Virus record (IMG/VR): IMGVR_UViG_3300025098_000012
Location: 1-64,000 of that record
Reading direction: 5' to 3' (one strand)
Length of the DNA stretch: 64,000 nt
The notes beneath the pieces are model-generated. The model saw nothing but the letters and a program-made list of their open reading frames with translations, had not been told where the DNA came from and did not search any database. The translations under genes were made by a program, and so were the position numbers. Shown one piece after another: positions 18,627-43,608 of this stretch; positions within the stretch are counted from its first letter, which is position 1; every line of letters starts with the position of its first letter.

Positions 18627-19499
18627 ATGAATAGAATAACTAAGGGTTTACAGTACCCTATTAGGAGTGGTGCGAGTACCCACTTCGACATGATGTTTGG
18701 AGTGTCAGCAGACGACCACTTCGACTTGATCTTCTCATATTTACAACCCAAAAAGGCAAAGCCTGTTGAGGTAGTGCGTAATGAGACTGAAAATTGGCTC
18801 TATGACGCACGATGTGAGAACTATGAGCGTGTGCTTGAGATGGTTCAGAGAAGAACCCCTTACAACAAGCGTTTCACGCTACCAGAGGATCAGATCGTAA
18901 GCTACTTCCATAGCTTCCTTACCGAACACTTCATCGAGAAAAATCAGCTCAAAAAAGAGCTTGATAAAGGCAAGACGGTGAAGCCATCGGTGGTCTATGA
19001 GTGGTTCTTGCAGTATGTGGTGCGTGAAAAGTACCAAGAAGGTCAAGATGCTCTCCAACGGACTCGTGGTGCGAGGACTCAATCAGAGGTGAATAAAATC
19101 AAGGCTTACGAGACAAAGCAGACTACGACCCCTTATGCTCCTGTCCATCATATCCAAAACCTTGAGTCAGAAGGTTGGCAGGTTGCTCAAGTGGTTTCCA
19201 AGACCGACTCTGAAACAGGTGTGCAAGTGGGAGAACCCGACTACTATGTAGATGGTGATACTCACAGTAGCGTTGAGGAGCGTTCGGAAAATGCGTACAT
19301 GAAAGAGCTGTTGCTTGATCGCTTTGGTAAAGACAAACTGAATATGTACTACTCGCTGTGGCTTGAGCTTCGCTATGATGAATACGAGAGCAAGAGGATG
19401 TGGGCTTCGGCTCGTAAGGTGTCATATAAAGTCTTGAATGCTCAAATCACTCAAGTCCGAGAGGTCTTTAAGGATAACCTAGAAGCCTTCGGTCATTGA
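18627..19499 (+). CDS. Possible divergent sigma-factor-like/HTH transcription protein
   Basis: Helical region-2-like segment (EDQIVSYFHSFLTEHF...VVYEWFLQYVVREKY) and C-terminal HTH-like segment (KRMWASARKVSYKVLNAQITQVREVF); SD GGAG. The ORF looks real; function is weakly supported. Confidence 0.35.
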   Translation: MNRITKGLQYPIRSGASTHFDMMFGVSADDHFDLIFSYLQPKKAKPVEVVRNETENWLYDARCENYERVLEMVQRRTPYNKRFTLPEDQIVSYFHSFLTEHFIEKNQLKKELDKGKTVKPSVVYEWFLQYVVREKYQEGQDALQRTRGARTQSEVNKIKAYETKQTTTPYAPVHHIQNLESEGWQVAQVVSKTDSETGVQVGEPDYYVDGDTHSSVEERSENAYMKELLLDRFGKDKLNMYYSLWLELRYDEYESKRMWASARKVSYKVLNAQITQVREVFKDNLEAFGH

Positions 19500-19518: not shown

Positions 19519-19890
19519 CTATCGCTTACCACCATCGTAAGCGACAGCATGACCCATACGGATCATCTCATCATTAAGAGACTCACCTAGCTCATTCATG
19601 TCCTCTTCATAAGCCCATAGGACACCGAGCCATCGACCAAACTTACCTTTTTTAACGGTATGAACGACAACCGTTTTACCCTCGATGCGAGATTTAAGGT
19701 ACTCTTTGGCTTCATATCCTCTAGCCTTTTCATCTAGGTCTTTGGTTCTGATCTCTGGTGTGTTGATCCCCACCATACGAACCTTGACTCTCGCAAAGTG
19801 TTTCATGCCTTGATCTATCATGAGGGTGACGGTATCTCCGTCATATACTGATAAAACTTCTGCTTTGTAGTGATATAAATTAAGCGACAT
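19519..19890 (-). CDS. Thermonuclease (staphylococcal nuclease family)
   Basis: VLSVYDGDTV, VRMVGINTPE, GKFGRWLG, LNDEMIRMGHAVAY. Confidence 0.92.
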   Translation of the reverse strand: MSLNLYHYKAEVLSVYDGDTVTLMIDQGMKHFARVKVRMVGINTPEIRTKDLDEKARGYEAKEYLKSRIEGKTVVVHTVKKGKFGRWLGVLWAYEEDMNELGESLNDEMIRMGHAVAYDGGKR

Positions 19891-22377: not shown

Positions 22378-22752
22378 ATGGGAGCAGGTGTAATGCTATT
22401 ATGTGGAAACAAAACCCTCATAATGAAGAGGGACCACTACAAACACGATAAATGGTCGGGTTATTGGAACTTTCCAGGAGGTCAAGGAGAGCCAAATGAA
22501 ACGACCTATCAGACAGCTCTAAGAGAGACTGAAGAAGAGACAGGCATCACACCCGATCAATATAAAGTTGTAGATCATGTAGAGGACAAGATTTACACGA
22601 TGTATGTCGGGGTGTGTAAGGAAGAGATCGTACCTGTTTTAGATCACGAGCATACGGAGTGGGAGTGGATAGTCATCTCTAAGATACCTAGTATGACTCG
22701 TGAGATGCACCCCAAAGATTGGCGAGGGTTTAAGAAGTATTATCGGCTTTAG
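22378..22752 (+). CDS. NUDIX hydrolase
   Basis: Nudix box GGQGEPNETTYQTALRETEEETG. Confidence 0.93.
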   Translation: MGAGVMLLCGNKTLIMKRDHYKHDKWSGYWNFPGGQGEPNETTYQTALRETEEETGITPDQYKVVDHVEDKIYTMYVGVCKEEIVPVLDHEHTEWEWIVISKIPSMTREMHPKDWRGFKKYYRL

Positions 22753-22755
22753 AAA

Positions 22756-23853
22756 TCACCAGACTTGAAAGTGAACACCTAAAGACCAAGTGTTCGACCC
22801 ATCAGTTCCGTAAACCCAACCAATACCAGGAGCGATGTTGAGGTTTTTACCCATGATGTAAGGATGCCATGTACCCATCAATCCTAGATACTGATTGGAC
22901 TCGGTTAGAGAAAAGTTAGCACCTAAACGATACTGACCTTTAACAAAGTTGACGAAACTCCCCCCTATAGATAGCCCAAACTCCCCCCCTTGATAAGTTG
23001 ACCCTACAAGTAAGCTCGGCTCGAACATCTTTAGCGTTAACCCTAAACCACCTGCGGGTACTTGGGGTATATAGATGAGTTGAGGATCAAGATTGGGATC
23101 ACCAGAATACATTTCGGACTCAAGACCCTCTATATTAATAAACTTTCCTTGATCATCAAAGTACCCACCATAAATGTGTATGCCTTGGTTCTGTACAGCA
23201 CCACTACCTAAACGAGATTGGTCTTCGCCATAACTAATCGCTACTACTTTAAACGCTAAGTTGAAGTCTACACCCGAACCTTCACCAGTCCAAAGATTTC
23301 TACTTGTAAACGAGTAAACAGGTTTACCATGTAAACGGAAAGGTGATTCCCATGTAAACTTGAAAGGTTGACACCTTTCGTCTGTTCGGTTCTCACACCA
23401 CTGTTGATCTTGTGTACTTACACCTCTCCAATCTTGAGGTGGTGGGGTTGTGGGTTTTTCTCTGTCTGTGAAGTCTCCGATGCGTGTTACACCTGCTTCT
23501 ACCCTTGACTCCATACGAACAAATCTTCGACTAATCGCATTGATTTTCGCTCCTGTCTCAGAGGTGTATCTGTCTATAGCCTGTTGTGTTCTTTGATCAA
23601 GACCACTAATGATTTCTGACGCTCTTTGTTCAAGCGTAGCTCGATCAACCATCTGAGACTGCACAGTTCCTAGTTTGGTATTTATCGCCGCAATTTTCGT
23701 AGCGTTATCATTAAGAACTCCATTTAGCTGATCTTGGATCGTAGCGTCCATCTGTTGCATTTTGTAGACAGACCAAGCGTTGCCCCCTACAGAAACCAAG
23801 AACAGGCTCAATAGAGCGTAAATACCATATTTTAGGTTCGCCAACTCAACCAT
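22756..23853 (-). CDS. Membrane-anchored coiled-coil protein with C-terminal beta-barrel-like domain (spanin-like candidate)
   Basis: N-terminal TM (YGIYALLSLFLVSVGGNAW), heptad-rich helical region, C-terminal amphipathic strands ending WSLGVHFQVW; SD AAGGAG. Confidence 0.6.
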   Translation of the reverse strand: MVELANLKYGIYALLSLFLVSVGGNAWSVYKMQQMDATIQDQLNGVLNDNATKIAAINTKLGTVQSQMVDRATLEQRASEIISGLDQRTQQAIDRYTSETGAKINAISRRFVRMESRVEAGVTRIGDFTDREKPTTPPPQDWRGVSTQDQQWCENRTDERCQPFKFTWESPFRLHGKPVYSFTSRNLWTGEGSGVDFNLAFKVVAISYGEDQSRLGSGAVQNQGIHIYGGYFDDQGKFINIEGLESEMYSGDPNLDPQLIYIPQVPAGGLGLTLKMFEPSLLVGSTYQGGEFGLSIGGSFVNFVKGQYRLGANFSLTESNQYLGLMGTWHPYIMGKNLNIAPGIGWVYGTDGSNTWSLGVHFQVW

Positions 23854-23894
23854 AGTAAATCTCCTTCGTTTAGATGGAGATACTATACCATGTC

Positions 23895-24227
23895 TTAATG
23901 AGCAAACACTCGTAGAACTGTTGTCCCCTCAATAAGATAGAGTCCACCTAGTCGTAGATTTTGTGTAGTACGCTGAAGGCTGTGAACCATATCTTTGAAG
24001 GTATTCATCTCTTTTGGGTCTACTTTTAGTACAATAAAACCACCATCGTGAATACCATCGTATGCAGACATAGTGGTCTTTTCCACAGAGATGAGATGAG
24101 GGTATGTGTGATCTTCAATGTAGTCTTGAGCATGGAGTCCAAGCTCGTTGAGTTTTTCTTCAAAAGAAGCGTCCTGCATCGTGTTTACTTTTCTCGATCT
24201 ACTCTCAAAGCGATTTATCATAGACAC
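23895..24227 (-). CDS. Hypothetical protein
   Basis: 110-aa ORF, last of a closely packed minus-strand run. Confidence 0.6.
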   Translation of the reverse strand: MSMINRFESRSRKVNTMQDASFEEKLNELGLHAQDYIEDHTYPHLISVEKTTMSAYDGIHDGGFIVLKVDPKEMNTFKDMVHSLQRTTQNLRLGGLYLIEGTTVLRVFAH

Positions 24228-24228
24228 C

Positions 24229-24474
24229 CTATTCTTTATCTTCTACGACAATGATCTCTCGTGTCGTCTTACCTGTGTTGTAGTCGATGTTCTCTCGAAC
24301 CCGAAAGACAGGTTCGGGGGCAGGCTGTGGTGGTCGGCTGTAGTAGCGAACTTCATTTCGCCACCGACCACCAACTTCGACCCATACAGTCTCTCCATTT
24401 TCCATTCGTTTGTAAGGCATATTCATTCTCCTTTTTAGATTGTTTTGATAACTTCCCACCAGCCTGGACCACAT
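24229..24474 (-). CDS. Small hypothetical protein
   Basis: Closely packed in the operon; real start probably the internal ATG after AAGGAG (~24426). Confidence 0.5.
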   Translation of the reverse strand: MWSRLVGSYQNNLKRRMNMPYKRMENGETVWVEVGGRWRNEVRYYSRPPQPAPEPVFRVRENIDYNTGKTTREIIVVEDKE

Positions 24475-24671
24475 TGTTCGGTACGCTGTAGGACTAAGGT
24501 TTGTGAGCCAAGAGGTTCAAGGTATTCACGATGTGTTTTGTCATATCCATCGCCACCTTTGGAGCGTAAGAGAGCGTCTGCTGAACAGACAAGCATCTCG
24601 TTAAGCCCAAAGTATTTAGCTCCGAATAATCCACACTGATCGACATCTGTGTAGATCTGCATACTCGCCAC
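24435..24671 (-). CDS. Small hypothetical protein
   Basis: Immediately downstream of the DUF1874-like gene. Confidence 0.5.
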   Translation of the reverse strand: MASMQIYTDVDQCGLFGAKYFGLNEMLVCSADALLRSKGGDGYDKTHREYLEPLGSQTLVLQRTEQCGPGWWEVIKTI

Positions 24672-24674
24672 CTG

Positions 24675-25067
24675 TCAATGCTGAAGCATTGAGAGGGGGA
24701 TCTGCTGGATCACTTGGAAGATACACTCTTTAAAGTGTTCGACTACGAACTCTGTGTCGTTTCGTGAACTTGCTGAGGGCTGTATGATGACCACCACATC
24801 ACCGTCAGAGAGGCTGACATTACCACCGACACACTCGCTCTTGGTCAGACCTTGAGCGAGAGCCACAGTAGACTCATGGCGAGGGTTGATAGCGTTGGAG
24901 AAGGTTATGTTCGACCCCATTTCAGCGAGACTGACGATAGCCTTAGCTTGGTCAACATCAATGTTGACTTTGTGGCATAGAGCTTCATCAATTAGCATCC
25001 GATTGCTGAAAGCCGAGCTGAGGATGATTCGTGATGTAGGTGCTTTGAAGATGTTTGCGATTGTCAT
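24675..25067 (-). CDS. DUF1874 / AcrIII-1-like cyclic oligoadenylate ring nuclease candidate
   Basis: RIILSSAFSNRML and NAINPRHESTVALAQGL match the family signatures (YLxNAFSxNML; SxGHxSTxxL); VSLSDGDVVVIIQ follows; SD AAAGGAG. Confidence 0.62.
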   Translation of the reverse strand: MTIANIFKAPTSRIILSSAFSNRMLIDEALCHKVNIDVDQAKAIVSLAEMGSNITFSNAINPRHESTVALAQGLTKSECVGGNVSLSDGDVVVIIQPSASSRNDTEFVVEHFKECIFQVIQQIPLSMLQH

Positions 25068-25112
25068 GTGGTTCTCCTTTCAAGAGAGAGATTGTGTTGA
25101 TGACATAAAGGT

Positions 25113-25128
25113 ATAAATAAGGGGTTAC
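25113..25128 (-). promoter_or_regulatory. Early-type motif copy 1 (GTAACCCCTTATTTAT)
   Basis: 61 nt upstream of the DUF1874-like start; near-identical copies at 35157, 35386 and 36028. Confidence 0.6.
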
Positions 25129-25188
25129 GCTTTGCCTTTTCTCATATAATAAGAGGATGCAAGCTGTACTTATAAGGAGGTGCGACAT

Positions 25189-27918
25189 ATGTTTGCCGAT
25201 ATGCTTGAGTCATTAAGACGACCAAATATACAACCCAAGTTGTGGATGAAAGATTGCGAGTTAATCTTAGGCACAAAGGAAAACCTAGACCAATGTATTG
25301 ATGAGTGTATCAACAGCGTTGCGTATGGGCTTGACCTTGAGACAACAGGTCTTGATAATCGTGTGTTCAACGGACGCACAAGAGATACGATTGTAGGGGT
25401 CTGCTTGTCAGCCCATAAGGATAAGGGGTACTATTTCCCTGTTGGTCATCAAGAGGGTGTGGAACATAACATTCCTTGGAGATTGATGTATCCTGCACTT
25501 GAGCGTCTGCTTGACCTCTCTGTGAAAGCAGAGCCTATATTCCACAACGCCGCTTTTGACCAAGAGTTTTTGGAGTTCAACGAGTACAAGTCGGGTCTTG
25601 GTGAGGAGCGTTGGGACTCATTTGAATGGCACGACACCTATATCATTCAGTATCTCTTGAACCCTCGTGAAAAAGGTGGTCGAGGACTAAAGCATTTAAC
25701 TAATGCCCACCTTGAGCGAGAGATGATTGAGCTATCAGATCTTATGCCCGATGCTCCCGACAAGAACTACTCCAAACTTGATGTGAGTTGGGAACCATGT
25801 GTTTGGTATGCCGCTAGTGATGCAATGTGTACGCTTGGACTATGGGAAGTACTTTATAAGAAGTACACCGAAGCTAAAGAACACACTAACTCGATGTATA
25901 AGTTAGAGCGTATGTGTCTACTTTCAACTCGTTGGATGCACAGAAATCGTGTCTACATTGATCGAGACACAGCCTTAAAGTATAGCCAACAGGGGCAGAA
26001 GCTATGGTTCGACTCTCTGATTGATGTCTATGATGGAGCAAAAGAAATCTTAGGTCGAGACATTACCCCTAACTATGTTCGAGTCCTTAAAGGAGATCTG
26101 AAGGGAGAAAACAAGTTTAACCACATGGAAGTGGAGGGGATGAGCTATAAGACTCGTGTAGACGAAGCTCGTAAAGAAGCCTCTCGACTTTACCCCGATG
26201 AAAAGGGAGTAGTCACTAAGGCTGTGAAGATTATCGGTAAGAGTGTAGGTACAGAGGAGATTGAGTTTCCACTTACTTATGACATCCTATCCCCTCAAAA
26301 GCTCGGCTTGTTATTTAGAGAGTTGAGTGTTCCAGGTCTTAAGGCGAGTGAAAAATCGGGTCAGGTCGTTACTTCCAAAGACATTCTTGAAGAGGTCATT
26401 GAGAAGGCTTCTGATGACTTTCCATTTATGGCTAAGGTTAAGACCTTTCGTGAGCTTGGGAAGGCAATGGGTCAGTATCTCATTCCATTTGTAGAAGATG
26501 TTGGACCAGATGGGACTCTCAAGCCTAAGTTTGATCAGTTTGCCGCTGACACAGGTCGTTTTTCATGTAAGACGAATAGTAAGCCTTGGAAAGTTAAAGA
26601 TGGAGGGTGTCGTGTTCCCTTTCAAGGCATACCTGCTACCTATGACCCAAATAAACCCGAAGCTGTTGCTAAGATGCGTTCTTGTGTGGCTGTGCGTGAT
26701 GACGATTGGTGGTTAGCGGCCATTGATTACGCAGGTGTAGAGCTTCGGCTAGTTACGAACTTGAGTCTTGAGCCTAAGTGGATCAAGGCTTTCTTTGAAT
26801 GTTCAGAATGTGGCACAGCTTACCCACAAGAAATTCAAGAAGACGGATTCGCCAAAGCACCTCCATCTAACTGCGTGAACTGTGGGTCTGATAAGATTGG
26901 AGACTTACATACGATCACAGCAGTTGCGTTTTATGGCGAGGGAGCTAAGAAGCGTGATGATTGGAAAGCGTTAAGAGGTAATGGTAAGGGTTGCAACTTT
27001 GCTTTGTCTTATGGTGGTACAGGTAAGGCTGTTCAGCGTACTATTGGTTGTTCAGCCGAAGAAGCAGATGAGAAGTTCAAGAAGTTTACATCAACTTATA
27101 GTGAACTGACTAAATGGTGGTCTAAGCAACACAACTTTGGTCGTAAGCATGGATATGTAAAGACAGGTATGGGTCGTGTTCAACCATTACCCGACATCAA
27201 GTCTGATGACTTTAGGTTTAAATCCAAAGATGAGCGTAAGGCTGTTAATGGTCCAGTACAGGGTACGAGTGCTGATGTCACCAAGTTGGCGATGAGCTTC
27301 ATCTACCAAGAGACTAAGAAGCGTGGTTGGCAAGATAAACTGATGATGATCTTGACCGTCCATGACGAAATCGTGTTCGAGATCCATAAGTCGATCTTGA
27401 AAGAGGCGATTGATATGATCTCCGAGATGATGACTCGCAACAAAGTGATTAAGCGTCTAGGTTGGCGAGTGCCTTTACTTGTCGATGTTGAGCTTGGTAA
27501 GGATTGGACTGTTCCTTTTGATGTGAAAGATGTGATTGCAGGAGAAGCAGGGGATAAGGTCATTAACGCTAAGTACAAGTGCAAGGATTGTGGTGAAAAG
27601 ACTCCTCGTGACCCTAAACCGACTGCGTGTATGCACTGTGGTTCGACTAACATTAAAATTGATTACAAAGATGACTTCATTGCCAAGATCAAGAAGCAGA
27701 CGGAACAACTTTATGCCGACTATGGGGTAAATCCCGATGAAGTTGTCAAAGAGGTGGTTGTAGAAGACCCTGTTGAGAAATCGTCCGATAAGCCCACCTT
27801 TTGTGTTGAGGGACTGACGGAAGAAATCGCAAAAAACCTGTCCGATTGGATTAAATCGCAAGATGGTGAGTATGATGTGGTATATGAAGGACGGAGTATT
27901 ATTGCATTATTAGAATGA
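25189..27918 (+). CDS. polA: Family A DNA polymerase with 3'-5' exonuclease and two zinc-ribbon insertions
   Basis: Exo motifs DLETTG, HNAAFD, YAASD; polymerase motifs A (IDYAGVELR), B (RGNGKGCNFALSYG), C (TVHDEIV). ATG 25189 has AAGGAGG 8 nt upstream (the track uses GTG 25180). Confidence 0.96.
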   Translation: MFADMLESLRRPNIQPKLWMKDCELILGTKENLDQCIDECINSVAYGLDLETTGLDNRVFNGRTRDTIVGVCLSAHKDKGYYFPVGHQEGVEHNIPWRLMYPALERLLDLSVKAEPIFHNAAFDQEFLEFNEYKSGLGEERWDSFEWHDTYIIQYLLNPREKGGRGLKHLTNAHLEREMIELSDLMPDAPDKNYSKLDVSWEPCVWYAASDAMCTLGLWEVLYKKYTEAKEHTNSMYKLERMCLLSTRWMHRNRVYIDRDTALKYSQQGQKLWFDSLIDVYDGAKEILGRDITPNYVRVLKGDLKGENKFNHMEVEGMSYKTRVDEARKEASRLYPDEKGVVTKAVKIIGKSVGTEEIEFPLTYDILSPQKLGLLFRELSVPGLKASEKSGQVVTSKDILEEVIEKASDDFPFMAKVKTFRELGKAMGQYLIPFVEDVGPDGTLKPKFDQFAADTGRFSCKTNSKPWKVKDGGCRVPFQGIPATYDPNKPEAVAKMRSCVAVRDDDWWLAAIDYAGVELRLVTNLSLEPKWIKAFFECSECGTAYPQEIQEDGFAKAPPSNCVNCGSDKIGDLHTITAVAFYGEGAKKRDDWKALRGNGKGCNFALSYGGTGKAVQRTIGCSAEEADEKFKKFTSTYSELTKWWSKQHNFGRKHGYVKTGMGRVQPLPDIKSDDFRFKSKDERKAVNGPVQGTSADVTKLAMSFIYQETKKRGWQDKLMMILTVHDEIVFEIHKSILKEAIDMISEMMTRNKVIKRLGWRVPLLVDVELGKDWTVPFDVKDVIAGEAGDKVINAKYKCKDCGEKTPRDPKPTACMHCGSTNIKIDYKDDFIAKIKKQTEQLYADYGVNPDEVVKEVVVEDPVEKSSDKPTFCVEGLTEEIAKNLSDWIKSQDGEYDVVYEGRSIIALLE

Positions 27919-35105: not shown

Positions 35106-35156
35106 GTATAATGTCCTTTCAAGACTATTAAGAGCAAGATCGCTCGATACTAGACG

Positions 35157-35172
35157 ATAGATAAGGGGTTAC
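35157..35172 (-). promoter_or_regulatory. Early-type motif copy 2
   Basis: GTAACCCCTTATCTAT, 67 nt upstream of the lipoprotein ATG. Confidence 0.6.
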
Positions 35173-35174
35173 CC

Positions 35175-35408
35175 ATGTATTATGTTCAGAATAAATCTAC
35201 AGGACAACCACTCTACTACACGCATAAAGGCAAGGTAGAGAAGGTCTATTCGCTACGCATCGTGGCAGAAATCGAAGCCGAGAAGGTGGATCAAGCAACT
35301 CACTTAAAGACAGCTAGGGTTGATGTCGTTGAGTTATCTAAGTCAGCTCGTCTATATATGGAGAATCAATCAAGAATGTGTGGTTGTAACCCCTTATCTA
35401 GCACTTAG
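35175..35408 (+). CDS. Small hypothetical protein
   Basis: AAGGGG 7 nt upstream of ATG; protein-like sequence. Confidence 0.5.
   Translation: MYYVQNKSTGQPLYYTHKGKVEKVYSLRIVAEIEAEKVDQATHLKTARVDVVELSKSARLYMENQSRMCGCNPLSST
35386..35400 (+). promoter_or_regulatory. Early-type motif copy 3
   Basis: GTAACCCCTTATCTA, 73 nt upstream of ATG 35459. Confidence 0.6.
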
Positions 35409-36016: not shown

Positions 36017-36027
36017 GGGAGGAAACC

Positions 36028-36043
36028 GTAACCCCTTATCTAT
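36028..36043 (+). promoter_or_regulatory. Early-type motif copy 4
   Basis: GTAACCCCTTATCTAT, 67 nt upstream of ATG 36095. Confidence 0.6.
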
Positions 36044-36094
36044 AACCTTACATGAGGAATGAACCTCACCAACTACTCTTACAAGGAGAACAAT

Positions 36095-37177: not shown

Positions 37178-37525
37178 TTAAGATTTCCACCAATCATCGA
37201 ACGCACCCCATTCGATCATCTCATATAGATCAGTAGGGATCGACCCGACACAATCATGGTGAAACCACTCACCATTTTGCCTTATACGCCACCTTTTAAG
37301 GTCTTCATGTAGGTGTGGTTCTCTCCACCCTAAACCTTCAAAAGAGGCTATAAGACGAAGCGTATTTGAGTTTCCTGTTTGAAGTTGCTTGAGTCTCTTC
37401 TTTGGGTGCTTAGAGCGACCTATCTTAATCATCCCTGTTTTGCTTTACTGGATGAAGTACAGATAGTCGCCCTGCTTTCGTTGCTTCTGCTCACGATTTC
37501 TATTTAACATTTCTTCTAAAGTCAT
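37178..37525 (-). pseudogene. T5orf172/GIY-YIG-like nuclease with in-frame TAA at codon 27
   Basis: From ATG 37525 (SD AAGGAG): MTLEEMLNRNREQKQRKQGDYLYFIQ*SKTGMIKIGRSKHPKKRLKQLQTGNS; stop at 37445-37447 falls inside the conserved first motif. Confidence 0.75.
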
Positions 37526-37573
37526 ATTTTACTCCTTACTTACATTATATGAGATTAGAAGAATGGAGTCTGT

Positions 37574-38749
37574 TCAGAAAAAATACTCATTATCATTCCA
37601 TTTAGGTTCGGGTGTTAAACCCTTACTCCAAATGAAGATCGGCTCACAAGTTGGTTGGTCTGTTTTCTGACCACCTCGCTCGGACATACGATAGCCAACC
37701 ACACCCTCATAGGTCGCTCCTAAGTTCTTCATGTGGTCAAGCATTGGTGTGCAGATGTCCTCTCCTTTTTTATCTGCAATGTTGATTGCTATCCGACCAC
37801 CTTCTTTGAGTACAGACCAACATTTAGTGAGGGTAGCGAGTAAGAAATCATTCACCCAATCATTAAGGTTTGGATAACGCTTCCACGATTGAGTCTCCTC
37901 CTCACTATATCTCTCGATGTCGAAGTAAGGAGGACTCGTGAAAACGAAGTCTACACTTATGTCAGATAAATCAGCATCCTCAGCAGGGGAACAGATAAAC
38001 CTAGTCGTTTTGCCTGTATCACAGAGGCTGACGATTTGCTTGTATGGCTCATGGAGCTGAGTATTAGGATCTATACCTATGTACGACTCAGCGTTCGAGG
38101 CGAGGAAGCCTACAAGCCTATCACCCCAACCAGCCGAGAAATCTAAGACGCTTTTGGGTTGGAACAGGTCATAGAGAGCTTTAGCCGACTCAGCTTTAAA
38201 CTGACTCGCAGTATAGGTGTGCATCTTTAAGGCTCTTCTGAGGGTTTGCTTATTGACTCCACCTCTCTCATAGATGTCTCTTTCACAAATGCCGAAGAAG
38301 CATCTTAGGAACGAGTTGCTTCTACTCGCATTGACCCACTCATCATAGGGTGAGTTTCCTTGTTTACGATAGCTACATTTCATTCTCTGTTCTTGGGTGA
38401 ACAGATTGGAAACAGTTTTCCCTCTATAGTAGTTATCAAGGTAGACTGACTTGCCTAGATAACTTGTGTCTAAGGGTTTAGCTTGACGAGGAGCGACCCA
38501 CCCTTCAAAGCAGAATGGATCTTTCCTTGCTTTGAGGGATTTAAAATCCTCGATTGCCATCTCTCTTGTGTACTCGAAGTACGGATAGGGCAAAGACTCA
38601 ATAATGGGTGCTAGATGGTCTTTGATCTGTTCCTTACTATATGTCTCACGAAGCATACTCCATTCGTTAGGGAGTATGTGAAGATACCCATCTTTAATGT
38701 ACTCGATGTCATCTAGCGAATTAAGATTGGTCTTATATTCAAAGTACAT
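37574..38749 (-). CDS. SAM-dependent amino (N4-C/N6-A) DNA methyltransferase, paralogue 3
   Basis: Motif I VLDFSAGWGDRL and motif IV FTSPPYF. Confidence 0.88.
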   Translation of the reverse strand: MYFEYKTNLNSLDDIEYIKDGYLHILPNEWSMLRETYSKEQIKDHLAPIIESLPYPYFEYTREMAIEDFKSLKARKDPFCFEGWVAPRQAKPLDTSYLGKSVYLDNYYRGKTVSNLFTQEQRMKCSYRKQGNSPYDEWVNASRSNSFLRCFFGICERDIYERGGVNKQTLRRALKMHTYTASQFKAESAKALYDLFQPKSVLDFSAGWGDRLVGFLASNAESYIGIDPNTQLHEPYKQIVSLCDTGKTTRFICSPAEDADLSDISVDFVFTSPPYFDIERYSEEETQSWKRYPNLNDWVNDFLLATLTKCWSVLKEGGRIAINIADKKGEDICTPMLDHMKNLGATYEGVVGYRMSERGGQKTDQPTCEPIFIWSKGLTPEPKWNDNEYFF

Positions 38750-41163: not shown

Positions 41164-42369
41164 TTATACTCCAAAGTAGCTATCTTGAGTCCACTTAGGT
41201 TCGGGGGCTGAACCCTTACTCCAAATGAAAATCGGCTCACAGAATACATCCATCTTGGATAGCTCATCATTTAATGAGTGATGGTTTCCTGGTCTCTTTG
41301 CCATACGATAACCAATCACTCCCTCATAGTTTGCCCCTAATGAATTCATATACTCGATCATGGGCTGACACACTCGGATGTTTCCTCTTACTTTATCGGA
41401 GATGTTTACGCATATCCTCCCTCCCTCTTCTAAGCAATCCCAACATTGCTTGAGGGTTGGGTAAAGAAACCCATTCAGCCAATCGTCAGTCTCTGGATAA
41501 CGCTTCCATGATTGAGTCTCTTCTTGACTATATTTCTCGGTGTCGAAATAAGGTGGACTCGTGAAAACGAAGTCTACTTTAACATCGGACAGGTCAGCAT
41601 CTTCGGCAGGTGAACAGATGAACCTAGTGGTCTTACTCGTAGAACAATAATCAGCGATCTTCTGATAAGGTTCATGTAACTTTGTGTTAGGGTCGAGTCC
41701 TACATAGGACTCGGCATCAGAAGCGAGGAATCCAACTAATCTATCGCCCCATCCCATAGAGAAATCCAATACTCTTTTAGCTCCGAAGAAGTTATACATA
41801 GCCTTAGCTAAAGTAGGTTTGAACTGTGCAGGGATATAACCAGACATACCGATAGCGTTTACAAGTATCTTGCTGTTCACACCTTTTGACGGATCATACA
41901 ATGTCCATAAAGGTCTAAGGAACGCTCTCTTTTTGGACTTGAGGTTAGTTCGTGTCCATTGTCTCATTGCACTTGGGAACTGCTTATGGTCTACCTCTAA
42001 ACGCATAGGTTCACTATATTGATTAGAGACTTTGAGTCCTTTGTTATTAGGTGCGAAGTAAAGATACTTACCTTTGTAAGTATGGTCTTCGTCTAACTGA
42101 CATCGAGGCAATCCCCAAGCACCCGATTGAGGGATCATGTAATCGGACTGAACCTCCAACCAATCTTTCTTGATCTCTTGTGGTGTGTACTTAGTGAGGG
42201 GGTAAGGTAAATCTTCAATCTTTGCAGACAGATAATCAGTGATCTCATCTCTGCTAAAGCTATCTACCATTTCTAACCACTGATGGGGTGGGATAAAGAT
42301 TTCATCCCCTTTCAAAACCTCATACTCTTCTAGGTTATCTTTTTTGGTTTTTTCATAGTCAAAGAACAT
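41164..42369 (-). CDS. Amino DNA methyltransferase, paralogue 2
   Basis: VLDFSMGWGDRL; FTSPPYF; highly similar to 42403-43608. Confidence 0.88.
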   Translation of the reverse strand: MFFDYEKTKKDNLEEYEVLKGDEIFIPPHQWLEMVDSFSRDEITDYLSAKIEDLPYPLTKYTPQEIKKDWLEVQSDYMIPQSGAWGLPRCQLDEDHTYKGKYLYFAPNNKGLKVSNQYSEPMRLEVDHKQFPSAMRQWTRTNLKSKKRAFLRPLWTLYDPSKGVNSKILVNAIGMSGYIPAQFKPTLAKAMYNFFGAKRVLDFSMGWGDRLVGFLASDAESYVGLDPNTKLHEPYQKIADYCSTSKTTRFICSPAEDADLSDVKVDFVFTSPPYFDTEKYSQEETQSWKRYPETDDWLNGFLYPTLKQCWDCLEEGGRICVNISDKVRGNIRVCQPMIEYMNSLGANYEGVIGYRMAKRPGNHHSLNDELSKMDVFCEPIFIWSKGSAPEPKWTQDSYFGV

Positions 42370-42402: not shown

Positions 42403-43608
42403 TTATATCTTAAAGTAAGTATCTTGAGTCCATTTAGGTTCGGGAGCTGAACCCTTACTCCAAATGAAAATCGGTTCGCAAAACACATTTACCTTAGACA
42501 GATCCTCGTTCAATGAGTGATGGTTTCCTGGTCTCTTCGACATCCTATAACCAATCACTCCCTCGTAAGTAGCACCTAATGACTCCATGTATTCAATCAT
42601 GGGTTGGCATACTCGTATATCACCATAAACCTTGTCTGATATATTGACGCAGATCCGTCCTCCGTCTTCTAATACCTCCCAACATTTTTTAAGAGTCGGG
42701 TAAAGAAATCCATTGAGCCAGTCATCTGTTTTGGGGTATCTCTTCCAACTCTGAGTATCTTCTTGGCTATACTTCTCGGTATCAAAGTAAGGAGGGCTTG
42801 TGAAGATAAAGTCTACTTTAACATCAGTTAGGTCTGCATCCTCAGCTGGAGAACAAATGAACTTAGTTTCTTTGTTTGCATTACAGTACGAATCTATTTG
42901 TCCATAAGGTTCATGGAGCTTAGTGTTAGGGTCGAGTCCTACATAGGACTCAGCGTCAGAAGCCAGAAACCCTACGAGCCTATCGCCCCACCCCATTGAG
43001 AAATCTAAGACCTTCTTTGCACCGAAGAAGTTATACATAGCTTTAGCTAGTGTTGGTTTGAACTGTGCAGGTATGTAATAAGCCATATTTATAGCGTTAA
43101 AGAGCATTTTCCTATTAACCCCTTTAGACCTGTCGTATAGGGTGAAAAAGGGTCTAAGGAAGTATCTCTTATCGCCTTTCATCCCTATACGAGTCCATTG
43201 AGTCATAGCACATTTGTACTCTCGATGATCTACTAATACTCTTGCGAACTCGGTGAACTGATTAGAGACTTTGAGTCCTTTGTTATTAGGTGCAAAGTAA
43301 AGATGCCTACCTTTATAAGTATGGTCACCATCTAACTGACATCGAGGCAATCCCCACTCTCCTGTGATTAGAGGCATATAGTCCGACTGAGTATCTAGCC
43401 AATCACGATGCACTTCTTGAGGAGTATATTTAGTATATGGGAATGGCAGTCCTTCAATCTTGCTTGATAGGTAAGTGATGATCTCATCACGAGTAAACTT
43501 ATCAAGCATCTCTGACCACTGATGAGGGGGTATGAAGATCTCTTGTCCTCTTACGACATCATATTCCTCTATGTCTTCTTTGGGTTTCTTTTCATAATCA
43601 AAAAACAT
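42403..43608 (-). CDS. Amino DNA methyltransferase, paralogue 1
   Basis: VLDFSMGWGDRL; FTSPPYF. Confidence 0.88.
   Translation of the reverse strand: MFFDYEKKPKEDIEEYDVVRGQEIFIPPHQWSEMLDKFTRDEIITYLSSKIEGLPFPYTKYTPQEVHRDWLDTQSDYMPLITGEWGLPRCQLDGDHTYKGRHLYFAPNNKGLKVSNQFTEFARVLVDHREYKCAMTQWTRIGMKGDKRYFLRPFFTLYDRSKGVNRKMLFNAINMAYYIPAQFKPTLAKAMYNFFGAKKVLDFSMGWGDRLVGFLASDAESYVGLDPNTKLHEPYGQIDSYCNANKETKFICSPAEDADLTDVKVDFIFTSPPYFDTEKYSQEDTQSWKRYPKTDDWLNGFLYPTLKKCWEVLEDGGRICVNISDKVYGDIRVCQPMIEYMESLGATYEGVIGYRMSKRPGNHHSLNEDLSKVNVFCEPIFIWSKGSAPEPKWTQDTYFKI

What the first reader, a model, noticed from the sequence alone, without database searches (positions are those of the whole stretch)
24675..25067. 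AcrIII-1-like ring nuclease candidate as first gene of an early cassette
Seen: SAFSNRML, RHEST and a later SSR segment line up with the DUF1874/AcrIII-1 signatures, including the catalytic His. Differences: GH becomes RH with a 2-aa insertion, and the conserved NR Arg appears absent (VGG). Established: AcrIII-1 degrades cA4 to silence type III CRISPR. Inference: an anti-type-III gene expressed immediately after infection, possibly with altered cyclic-nucleotide specificity (e.g. cA3/cA6 or CBASS signals). DNA modification would not protect against RNA-targeting type III systems, so the two would be complementary.
Basis: partly seen in the sequence, partly recalled or inferred. Interest (0 to 1): 0.75.

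Follow-up and report, generated by a model that had tools for sequence, protein, structure and literature searches.

The report
Divergent AcrIII-1-like ring nuclease gene
A 130-residue gene of an uncultured marine huge phage is a distant relative, missed by Pfam, of the viral enzymes that destroy the cyclic-nucleotide alarm signal of type III CRISPR; it keeps the catalytic histidine, but two other residues needed for activity are replaced, so what it acts on is unknown.

Summary

Homology to the family:
- Pfam, PHROGs and NCBIfam do not recognise the protein.
- A profile of its 28 relatives matches a profile of 17 PF08960 (DUF1874/AcrIII-1) proteins at 98.4% probability, E 6e-15.
- A homodimer is predicted (0.79 against 0.06 for the best control).

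Active site:
- The catalytic His (H64) and the Ser/Thr after it are conserved across all 91 family members, with a few exceptions.
- The equivalents of N8 and R66, which Crn2 needs for activity, are Ser18 and Gly81.
- An Arg sits directly before the His, and the lid loop differs.

Context:
- The family occurs only in uncultured, mostly marine, phage-like contigs, never beside CRISPR-Cas.
- The gene lies 50 nt behind a phage-specific promoter-like motif with 40 exact copies in the genome, mostly ahead of small non-structural genes. Expression timing is not established.

Verdict: this is a new variant of a known kind. It is most likely a cyclic-oligonucleotide phosphodiesterase used against host immunity, with an untested substrate.

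The parts
24675..25067 (-). CDS, 130 aa: divergent DUF1874/AcrIII-1-fold protein ('NPRH clade'). Key codons: S18 25016-25014, R63 24881-24879, H64 24878-24876, S66/T67 24872-24867, G81 24827-24825, R102 24764-24762, E106 24752-24750.
25074..25079 (-). Ribosome-binding site AAGGAG, 6 nt before the ATG.
   Evidence: Read from the sequence; conserved in relatives.
25112..25129 (-). Promoter-like motif CGTAACCCCTTATTTATA (consensus YGTAACCCCTTATYTATA). The GTAACCCCTTA core (25118-25128) ends 50 nt before the ATG.
   Evidence: 40 exact core copies in the 226.7-kb genome, 47 with <=1 mismatch, against 0-9 in shuffles. 45 of the 47 point at an RBS plus start codon. Conserved upstream of the homologue in relatives L005-L012.
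22756..24662 (-). Four tightly packed co-oriented downstream genes with no family match: 75 aa (24435-24662), 63 aa (24229-24420), 108 aa (23895-24221) and 365 aa (22756-23853). They probably share the candidate's transcription unit.
   Evidence: Gene calls and order are conserved in three contigs. No Pfam or PHROG hits. No further promoter motif before 18651.
25189..27918 (+). Divergently transcribed family-A DNA polymerase (909 aa from ATG 25189). It is a neighbour, not part of the system.
   Evidence: Pfam DNA_pol_A 7.8e-64. The same divergent arrangement occurs in the 375-kb relative L010, but not in the 50%-identical L013.

Best explanation
The gene encodes a homodimeric protein of the DUF1874 (STIV B116 / AcrIII-1 / Crn2) fold. 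It belongs to a clade so divergent that Pfam does not detect it. I propose that it works like the viral ring nucleases. A cyclic oligonucleotide second messenger made by a host defence system (cA4 or a related cyclic oligoadenylate or cyclic oligonucleotide) binds in the pocket at the dimer interface. A flexible loop (about residues 97-108, carrying invariant R102 and E106) closes over it. H64 then acts as general acid for metal-independent cleavage by in-line attack of a ribose 2'-OH. This removes the signal and keeps host effector proteins inactive. What is shown here: homology, fold, predicted dimer, family-wide conservation of the His-x-Ser-Thr motif, strictly phage-borne distribution, and a position behind a phage-specific promoter-like motif. 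What is inferred: ligand binding, catalysis, the identity of the substrate, the anti-defence role and the timing of expression. The scissile-phosphate contacts of the classical enzymes (N8, R66) are replaced by S18 and G81, and a family-specific Arg (R63) sits next to the His. The phosphate-binding part of the site is therefore rebuilt, and the substrate may differ from cA4.
For: Sequence homology:
- A profile of the close family pulls STIV B116 as top PDB hit (E 0.077). It also finds a bona fide PF08960 protein, P0094, at E 6.6e-4 among 1.84 billion proteins.
- hhalign of A1 against DUF1874 members: 97.5% probability, E 4.9e-12.
- The clean comparison A4 against A6, which share no sequences: 98.4% probability, E 6e-15. 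Rerun locally: 98.7%, E 1.7e-16.

Structure:
- AF2 model: pLDDT 90.8, pTM 0.86, no templates, no PF08960 sequence in the alignment.
- All 16 Foldseek PDB hits at E <= 1e-3 have the DUF1874 fold, and the next hit has E 0.027.
- AFDB and BFVD searches agree.
- Homodimer score 0.79 against 0.06 for the best control. The tool's pass mark was reached by 20 of 30 proteins solved as pairs of one chain and by 1 of 23 solved as single chains. The interface uses residues 19-23 and 27-35, which are the substrate motif and strand beta2, as in Crn2 (PMC11317161).

Conservation over 91 sequences: H64 90/91, T67 89/91, S66 86/91 plus 4 Thr, R102 90/91, E106 90/91, N58 91/91, P97 91/91, R63 85/91.

Other:
- pLDDT dips to 76 in residues 101-110, as expected for a mobile lid.
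- All contexts examined are phage-like.
- H47 is the catalytic residue of gp29, and S49/T50 contact cA4 (10.1101/778746).
Against: - The Pfam PF08960 model gives no match at all.
- N8 and R66 of AcrIII-1 stabilise the scissile phosphate, and their alanine mutants in Crn2 (N451A, R514A) markedly reduce activity. Here they are S18 and G81, and both substitutions hold across almost the whole clade.
- The lid region does not align in register: R102 lies 2 residues after the position aligned to R85, and E106 lies 3 residues after the position aligned to E88.
- The fold alone does not prove the activity. AFV3-109 (2j6b) shares it and has no known ring nuclease function.
- The host is unknown, so whether it has a cyclic-nucleotide defence system is unknown.
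- No expression data exist.
- In its native host, SIRV2 gp37 does not act as an anti-CRISPR during infection and also binds a host methyltransferase.
- The structure and complex predictions may partly reflect memory of solved DUF1874 dimers.
Confidence: 0.55

Rival explanations
1. The protein is a non-catalytic DUF1874-fold protein. It would act by binding rather than cleaving: either as a sponge that sequesters a nucleotide signal, or as an inhibitor of a host protein, as reported for SIRV2 gp37 and the lysine methyltransferase SiL_1451.
For: Two of the four residues whose mutation cripples Crn2 (the N8 and R66 equivalents) are missing. gp37 has a second, protein-binding function and shows no native anti-CRISPR activity. 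Phage sponges for immune nucleotides are a known strategy.
Against: The His-x-Ser-Thr motif is conserved in 90/91, 86/91 (+4 Thr) and 89/91 sequences, down to 21-30% identity. An extra Arg next to the His is present in 85/91, and the Arg/Glu pair in the lid loop in 90/91 each. This is the pattern of a maintained active site, not just a binding surface.
Confidence: 0.2
2. The protein is a nucleic-acid-binding or nucleic-acid-processing accessory factor of replication or transcription. This is the older proposal for DUF1874-fold proteins. One version would be a small metal-independent RNase acting on linear RNA and leaving 2',3'-cyclic phosphates.
For: It lies head-to-head with the family-A DNA polymerase, and this arrangement is kept in close relatives. 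From my own knowledge, not checked here: B116 and SIRV1 ORF114 were first described as DNA-binding proteins. The His-based general-acid chemistry would also suit linear RNA.
Against: The polymerase adjacency is lost in the 50%-identical homologue of a 290-kb phage, and distant members have unrelated neighbours. The predicted dimer keeps the closed basket-type interface of ring nucleases. The biochemical function established for the family is cA4 cleavage.
Confidence: 0.12
3. The similarity is fortuitous and the ORF is an unrelated small phage protein.
For: No direct hit in Pfam, PHROGs or NCBIfam. The ESM Atlas feature search gave only weak alpha/beta-hydrolase leads.
Confidence: 0.02

Closest known systems
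AcrIII-1 (SIRV1 gp29; PDB 6SCF, 2X4I), viral ring nuclease, DUF1874 / Pfam PF08960
   Different: About 20% identity and not detected by the PF08960 model. N8 becomes S18. G46 becomes R63, with a two-residue insertion (N61 P62) before it. N65/R66 become V80/G81. The lid loop has a different length and register (R102...E106 against R85..E88). The helix after the lid is about 6 residues shorter. The host is a bacterium of marine plankton (inferred), not a thermophilic archaeon. Activity is untested.
STIV B116 (PDB 2J85)
   Different: The active-site differences are the same as for gp29. 21-23% identity.
Crn2 domain of Marinitoga Csx1-Crn2 (PDB 8Y7F, 8Y7G)
   Different: Crn2 is cellular, fused to Csx1 and encoded in a type III CRISPR locus. 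N451, R514 and E536 are needed for its activity, and the first two have no counterpart here. No member of the present clade was seen near CRISPR-Cas genes.
AFV3-109 (PDB 2J6B), crenarchaeal virus protein of unknown function
   Different: It is a weaker match than the true DUF1874 enzymes. It is listed as a reminder that the fold does not by itself prove ring nuclease activity.

Membership tests
DUF1874 / AcrIII-1 / Crn2 (Pfam PF08960 STIV_B116-like) | Match to the Pfam PF08960 HMM above its gathering score (26 bits) | tested here: not met
   No hit even at E <= 10 for the protein or for the six-frame genome. Of the 22 sequences of alignment A2 only one, the bridging hit P0094, matches the model. 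Positive controls: gp29 100.7 bits and B116 89.9 bits.
DUF1874 / AcrIII-1 / Crn2 (Pfam PF08960 STIV_B116-like) | Homology detectable by profile methods | tested here: met
   hhalign 98.4% probability, E 6e-15, with no shared sequences; 97.5%, E 4.9e-12. hmmsearch of the family profile reaches PF08960 member P0094 at E 6.6e-4 in 1.84e9 proteins.
DUF1874 / AcrIII-1 / Crn2 (Pfam PF08960 STIV_B116-like) | Alpha/beta fold with a five-stranded sheet and three helices | tested here: met
DUF1874 / AcrIII-1 / Crn2 (Pfam PF08960 STIV_B116-like) | Homodimer with the ligand site at the interface | tested here: met
   Prediction only. ipSAE 0.79 against 0.06 for the best control; the tool's pass mark was reached by 20 of 30 proteins solved as pairs of one chain and by 1 of 23 solved as single chains. 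The interface includes residues 19-23 and 27-35. The result could partly reflect memory of solved DUF1874 dimers.
DUF1874 / AcrIII-1 / Crn2 (Pfam PF08960 STIV_B116-like) | Catalytic histidine (gp29 H47, Crn2 H495) followed by x-Ser-Thr | tested here: met
   H64/S66/T67 align with H47/S49/T50. H is present in 90/91 family members, S in 86/91 (+4 Thr), T in 89/91.
DUF1874 / AcrIII-1 / Crn2 (Pfam PF08960 STIV_B116-like) | Asn of the NAFS motif (gp29 N8, Crn2 N451), which stabilises the scissile phosphate | tested here: not met
   The aligned residue is S18. Ser occupies this position in 84 of the 86 sequences that have a residue there. N451A markedly lowers Crn2 activity.
DUF1874 / AcrIII-1 / Crn2 (Pfam PF08960 STIV_B116-like) | Arg of the NR motif (gp29 R66, Crn2 R514), which stabilises the scissile phosphate | tested here: not met
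   The aligned residue is G81 (Gly in 88/91), followed by G/A82. R514A markedly lowers Crn2 activity. Whether R63 or R23 compensates could not be tested, because no model coordinates were available.
DUF1874 / AcrIII-1 / Crn2 (Pfam PF08960 STIV_B116-like) | Mobile lid loop with locking Arg (R85) and His-stabilising Glu (E88) | tested here: inconclusive
   A loop at residues 97-108 with lower pLDDT (76) carries R102 and E106, each present in 90/91 sequences. In the gapless alignment R102 lies 2 positions after R85 and E106 lies 3 positions after E88, and the loop length differs.
DUF1874 / AcrIII-1 / Crn2 (Pfam PF08960 STIV_B116-like) | Metal-independent cleavage of cA4 to A2>P | not testable with these tools
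   Needs biochemistry. cA4 is not among the ligands of the complex predictor.
DUF1874 / AcrIII-1 / Crn2 (Pfam PF08960 STIV_B116-like) | Protection of a virus or plasmid from type III CRISPR targeting | not testable with these tools
   The host is unknown and the phage is uncultured. Only marine DNA metagenome runs hold it.
YeeU/CbeA antitoxin (PDB 2H28, 2INW) | Significant sequence or fold similarity | tested here: not met
   Only a 20-residue local resemblance around NPRH..T..L.A.GLT, at E 1.3-1.9. It is absent from both fold searches.

The most novel reading that the evidence does not exclude
The 'NPRH clade' would be a distinct family of phage ring nucleases. Its rebuilt phosphate-binding site (Ser for N8, Gly for R66, a new Arg beside the catalytic His, a different lid) would give it a different substrate from AcrIII-1. 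Candidates are cA6 or cA3, or a CBASS-type cyclic oligonucleotide. That would make it the DUF1874-fold counterpart of the viral cA3/cA6-degrading enzymes that the field has been expecting (PMC8284326), deployed by marine huge phages.
Probability: 0.2. Interest if true: 0.8.

Novelty: new variant of a known kind. Interest (0 to 1): 0.55.

Why it matters
Viral ring nucleases are among the few anti-CRISPRs that disable a whole class of type III systems by destroying the signal. Surveys of anti-defence genes that rely on a PF08960-type model would miss this clade, as that model does here. The clade extends the fold to uncultured marine huge phages.

The active site keeps the catalytic His while both scissile-phosphate ligands are exchanged. 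If the protein is active, it shows how specificity or catalysis can be rebuilt on this scaffold. It could also supply an enzyme for other immune cyclic nucleotides.

The accompanying promoter-like motif (40 exact copies in the genome) gives a handle on the transcription programme of a phage lineage with no cultured member.

Tried and rejected
- Direct family searches of the protein found nothing useful. Pfam gave nothing at E <= 10. PHROGs gave only phrog_35921 at E 0.15. NCBIfam gave only noise. A single-sequence search of the PDB gave only noise.
- The ESM Atlas feature search gave alpha/beta-hydrolase clusters at 0.65-0.79, below the level that means anything. Rejected.
- The local resemblance to YeeU/CbeA (NPRH..T..L.A.GLT, E about 1-2) was rejected, because neither fold search supports it.
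- The comparison of A2 with A3 (E 1e-20) was discarded as evidence, because P0094 is in both alignments. It was replaced by A4 against A6.
- My slip: the pattern scan of genome contigs had a gap of 42 N instead of 40 and was out of frame. Absence of the clade from cellular genomes was therefore NOT tested by that route. The same faulty pattern on viral contigs found nothing.
- The corrected pattern works on the window and finds only the close relatives in IMG/VR.
- tblastn of the protein against 50,697 GenBank phage records found no match at E <= 1. megablast of the region found no match.
- The sigma-70 promoter and terminator scan showed nothing upstream of the gene. The real signal was the phage-specific motif found later.
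- Transcript evidence: no RNA run was listed. Only marine DNA metagenome contigs hold the region.
Model coordinates are not exposed, so I could not measure whether R63 or R23 reaches the position of R66.

Full report
**1. What is there**

The finding's coordinates hold a real gene. It is an ORF of 130 codons on the minus strand, 24675-25067. It starts at ATG 25067 and has an AAGGAG ribosome-binding site 6 nt upstream.

The window is the first 64 kb of a 226,698-base IMG/VR virus record, estimated 73% complete. Homologues lie on contigs of up to 376 kb. The neighbouring genes include baseplate J, a sheath initiator, a family-A DNA polymerase, DnaB, SNF2 helicases and N6/N4 DNA methyltransferases. 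This is therefore an uncultured huge tailed phage.

Only marine and seawater metagenome runs hold the sequence. Its polymerase has no close cultured relative. The best GenBank phage match is an uncultured 485-kb phage at 45.6% identity.

**2. Is it related to AcrIII-1?**

Direct searches say no. Pfam finds nothing at E <= 10. The PF08960 model does not ring anywhere in the phage genome. PHROGs and NCBIfam are also blank.

Profile methods say yes.
- The protein has 73 metagenomic homologues of 45-93% identity (alignment A1).
- A profile of them ranks STIV B116 first in the PDB (E 0.077), aligned over residues 12-97.
- The same profile, run against 1.84 billion representative proteins, finds about 20 more distant clusters. 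It also finds, at E 6.6e-4, P0094, which is a bona fide PF08960 protein (5.4e-20).
- I built an independent DUF1874 alignment from SIRV1 gp29 (L001:16362-16706, PF08960 at 100.7 bits).
- Profile-profile comparison between the two families, with no sequence in common, gives 98.4% probability and E 6e-15 over 85 columns. A local rerun gives 98.7% and E 1.7e-16.

**3. Fold and quaternary structure**

An AlphaFold2 model was built from the 28-sequence alignment A4. It used no templates and no PF08960 member, and it is confident (pLDDT 90.8, pTM 0.86).

Foldseek against the PDB returns 16 significant chains, and all have the DUF1874 fold. They are STIV B116 (TM 0.72/0.79, rmsd 2.1 A), SIRV1 gp29 with and without cA4, the Crn2 domain of Csx1-Crn2, and AFV3-109. 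The next hit has E 0.027.

A homodimer is predicted with score 0.79, against 0.06 for the best of three controls. The tool's pass mark was reached by 20 of 30 proteins solved as pairs of one chain and by 1 of 23 solved as single chains. The interface uses residues 19-23 (the AFSNR motif) and 27-35 (strand beta2). This matches the description of the Crn2 dimer as formed through the second strands (PMC11317161). These predictions may owe something to memory of solved DUF1874 dimers.

**4. The active site**

In gp29, H47 is the general acid, and H47A loses more than 2500-fold in activity. R85 on a mobile loop (residues 82-94) locks the closed dimer. N8, S11, N13, S49, T50, R66 and Q81 contact cA4 (10.1101/778746).

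In Crn2, the scissile phosphate is held by N451 and R514 (= N8, R66). E536 (= E88) supports the His. N451A, H495A, R514A and E536A all markedly lower activity.

The alignments map these residues as follows:

| gp29 residue | Residue here |
|---|---|
| N8 | S18 |
| S11 | S21 |
| N13 | R23 |
| G46 | R63, preceded by a two-residue insertion (N61 P62) |
| H47 | H64 |
| S49 / T50 | S66 / T67 |
| N65 / R66 | V80 / G81 |
| Q81 | Q96 |

Conservation over 91 family members, 72 close and 19 distant:

| Residue | Conserved in |
|---|---|
| N58 | 91/91 |
| P97 | 91/91 |
| H64 | 90/91 |
| R102 | 90/91 |
| E106 | 90/91 |
| T67 | 89/91 |
| N61, P62 | 89/91 each |
| G81 | 88/91 |
| S66 | 86/91, plus 4 Thr |
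| R63 | 85/91 |
| S18 | 84 of the 86 sequences with a residue there |

The catalytic His and its Ser/Thr neighbours are therefore under strong constraint. Both classical phosphate ligands are consistently absent. New invariant residues appear: R63 beside the His, and an R-x-x-x-E pair in a loop whose pLDDT drops to 76.

The lid does not align in register with R85/E88, and the helix that follows is about six residues shorter.

My reading is a maintained but rebuilt active site. Whether R63 takes over the role of R66 could not be measured, because model coordinates are not exposed.

**5. Distribution and context**

Every context I could read is phage-like.
- In close relatives (83-84% identity), including a 375-kb contig, the gene sits head-to-head with the DNA polymerase. 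It is followed by the same small genes.
- In a 290-kb phage with a 50%-identical copy the neighbour is different.
- Distant members lie among runs of small unknown ORFs on Tara and other contigs. Their neighbours include thymidine kinase, dNK, an AAA_5 ATPase, UvdE, a CCA-adding-type enzyme and PhoH.
- None is next to CRISPR-Cas genes.
- There is no tblastn match in 50,697 GenBank phage records.
- There is a single copy in the phage's own genome.

My scan of cellular genomes was spoiled by a miscounted gap. It says nothing about whether the clade occurs in cellular genomes.

**6. 'First gene of an early cassette'**

Aligning the upstream regions of relatives exposed a conserved element. Its core, GTAACCCCTTA, occurs 5 times in the window against 0.74 expected. 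In the whole genome it occurs 40 times exactly and 47 times with <=1 mismatch, against 0-9 in shuffles.

The consensus is YGTAACCCCTTATYTATA. Of the 47 copies, 45 point at an RBS and start codon, mostly 30-70 nt downstream. The median downstream ORF is 130 aa, and 29 copies are packed into 82-109 kb.

The larger genes behind the motif encode an AAA_5 ATPase, a VWA protein, a CNNM/CBS protein and an SNF2 helicase. None is structural.

The candidate's copy (25112-25129, minus strand) has its core ending 50 nt before the ATG. It is kept in all close relatives. No further copy follows until 18651, so the candidate probably leads a unit with the 75-, 63-, 108- and 365-aa genes.

The polymerase on the other strand has a different upstream element, TCTCATATAAT.

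This supports 'first gene behind a dedicated phage promoter class that drives small non-structural genes'. That the class is early remains an inference, because no RNA run could be found. Timing matters here: SIRV2 gp37, a classical family member, is expressed middle/late and fails as an anti-CRISPR during native infection (10.1101/2023.01.10.523387).

**7. Mechanism and verdict**

The most likely explanation (0.55) is a homodimeric, His-dependent, metal-independent phosphodiesterase that degrades a cyclic oligonucleotide immune signal. The substrate is undetermined. cA4 is the default by homology, but the rebuilt phosphate site makes a different substrate a live possibility (about 0.2 overall).

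The rivals are:
- a non-catalytic binder or host-protein inhibitor (0.2);
- a nucleic-acid-directed function linked to replication (0.12);
- chance similarity (0.02).

The protein is not a member of Pfam PF08960 as defined and lacks two functionally tested residues. I therefore file it as a new variant of a known kind rather than as an AcrIII-1.

Noticed in passing
window 25112-25129(-), 35155-35173(-), 35385-35402(+), 36027-36044(+), 18634-18652(-, 1 mismatch); 42 more copies in G000 beyond the window, densest at 82-109 kb: A promoter-like motif, YGTAACCCCTTATYTATA, is specific to this phage. It has 40 exact core copies in 226.7 kb (47 with <=1 mismatch, against 0-9 in shuffles). Nearly all sit 30-70 nt upstream of an RBS and start codon of small, non-structural genes. 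It suggests a dedicated (phage-encoded or redirected) RNA polymerase specificity..
   Followed up: partly
window 25140-25150(+) and 37544-37554(-): The DNA polymerase gene has a different upstream element, TCTCATATAAT (extended -10-like). The exact 11-mer recurs once more in the genome, upstream of a gene starting near 37505 on the minus strand. It is possibly a second promoter class.
   Followed up: no
window 25189-27918(+): The family-A DNA polymerase carries a C-terminal zinc-ribbon/HypA-like segment (residues ~795-830) and a further Cys-rich insert near residue 550. The better start is ATG 25189 rather than GTG 25180. The nearest GenBank phage relative is an uncultured 485-kb phage (LR745208.1, 45.6%).
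   Followed up: partly
window 37574-38749(-), 41164-42369(-), 42403-43608(-): Three N6/N4-type DNA methyltransferase genes, two of them tandem 401-aa paralogues.
   Followed up: no
window 22378-22752(+): A NUDIX hydrolase gene sits on the opposite strand inside the otherwise minus-strand gene run downstream of the candidate. The arrangement is conserved in relatives.
   Followed up: no
window 19519-19890(-): A staphylococcal-nuclease-like endonuclease (PF00565; phrog_452, 1.2e-35) lies at the end of the small-gene run, just before the baseplate module.
   Followed up: no
protein P0073 (NCBI, Myxococcales MAG, 118 aa): The C-terminal 47 residues of this protein match residues 84-130 of the candidate at 67% identity, while the protein itself is annotated with a thioesterase domain (PF03061). 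It is possibly a chimeric gene call or a phage fragment in a MAG.
   Followed up: no
L042 8001-9687; G000 93630-94769 and 96514-97326: In an 85-kb contig a distant clade member lies directly upstream of an AAA_5 (MoxR-like) ATPase gene. In the window's own phage an AAA_5 gene and a VWA gene lie behind the same promoter motif as the candidate, but elsewhere in the genome. The link may be coincidence.
   Followed up: no
BFVD hits A0A1B2IEC3, J7KCD4 (Erwinia jumbo phages Kwan, phiEaH2): Weak fold matches (TM about 0.5, 6-17% identity) suggest that further unrecognised DUF1874-like proteins exist in cultured jumbo phages.
   Followed up: no
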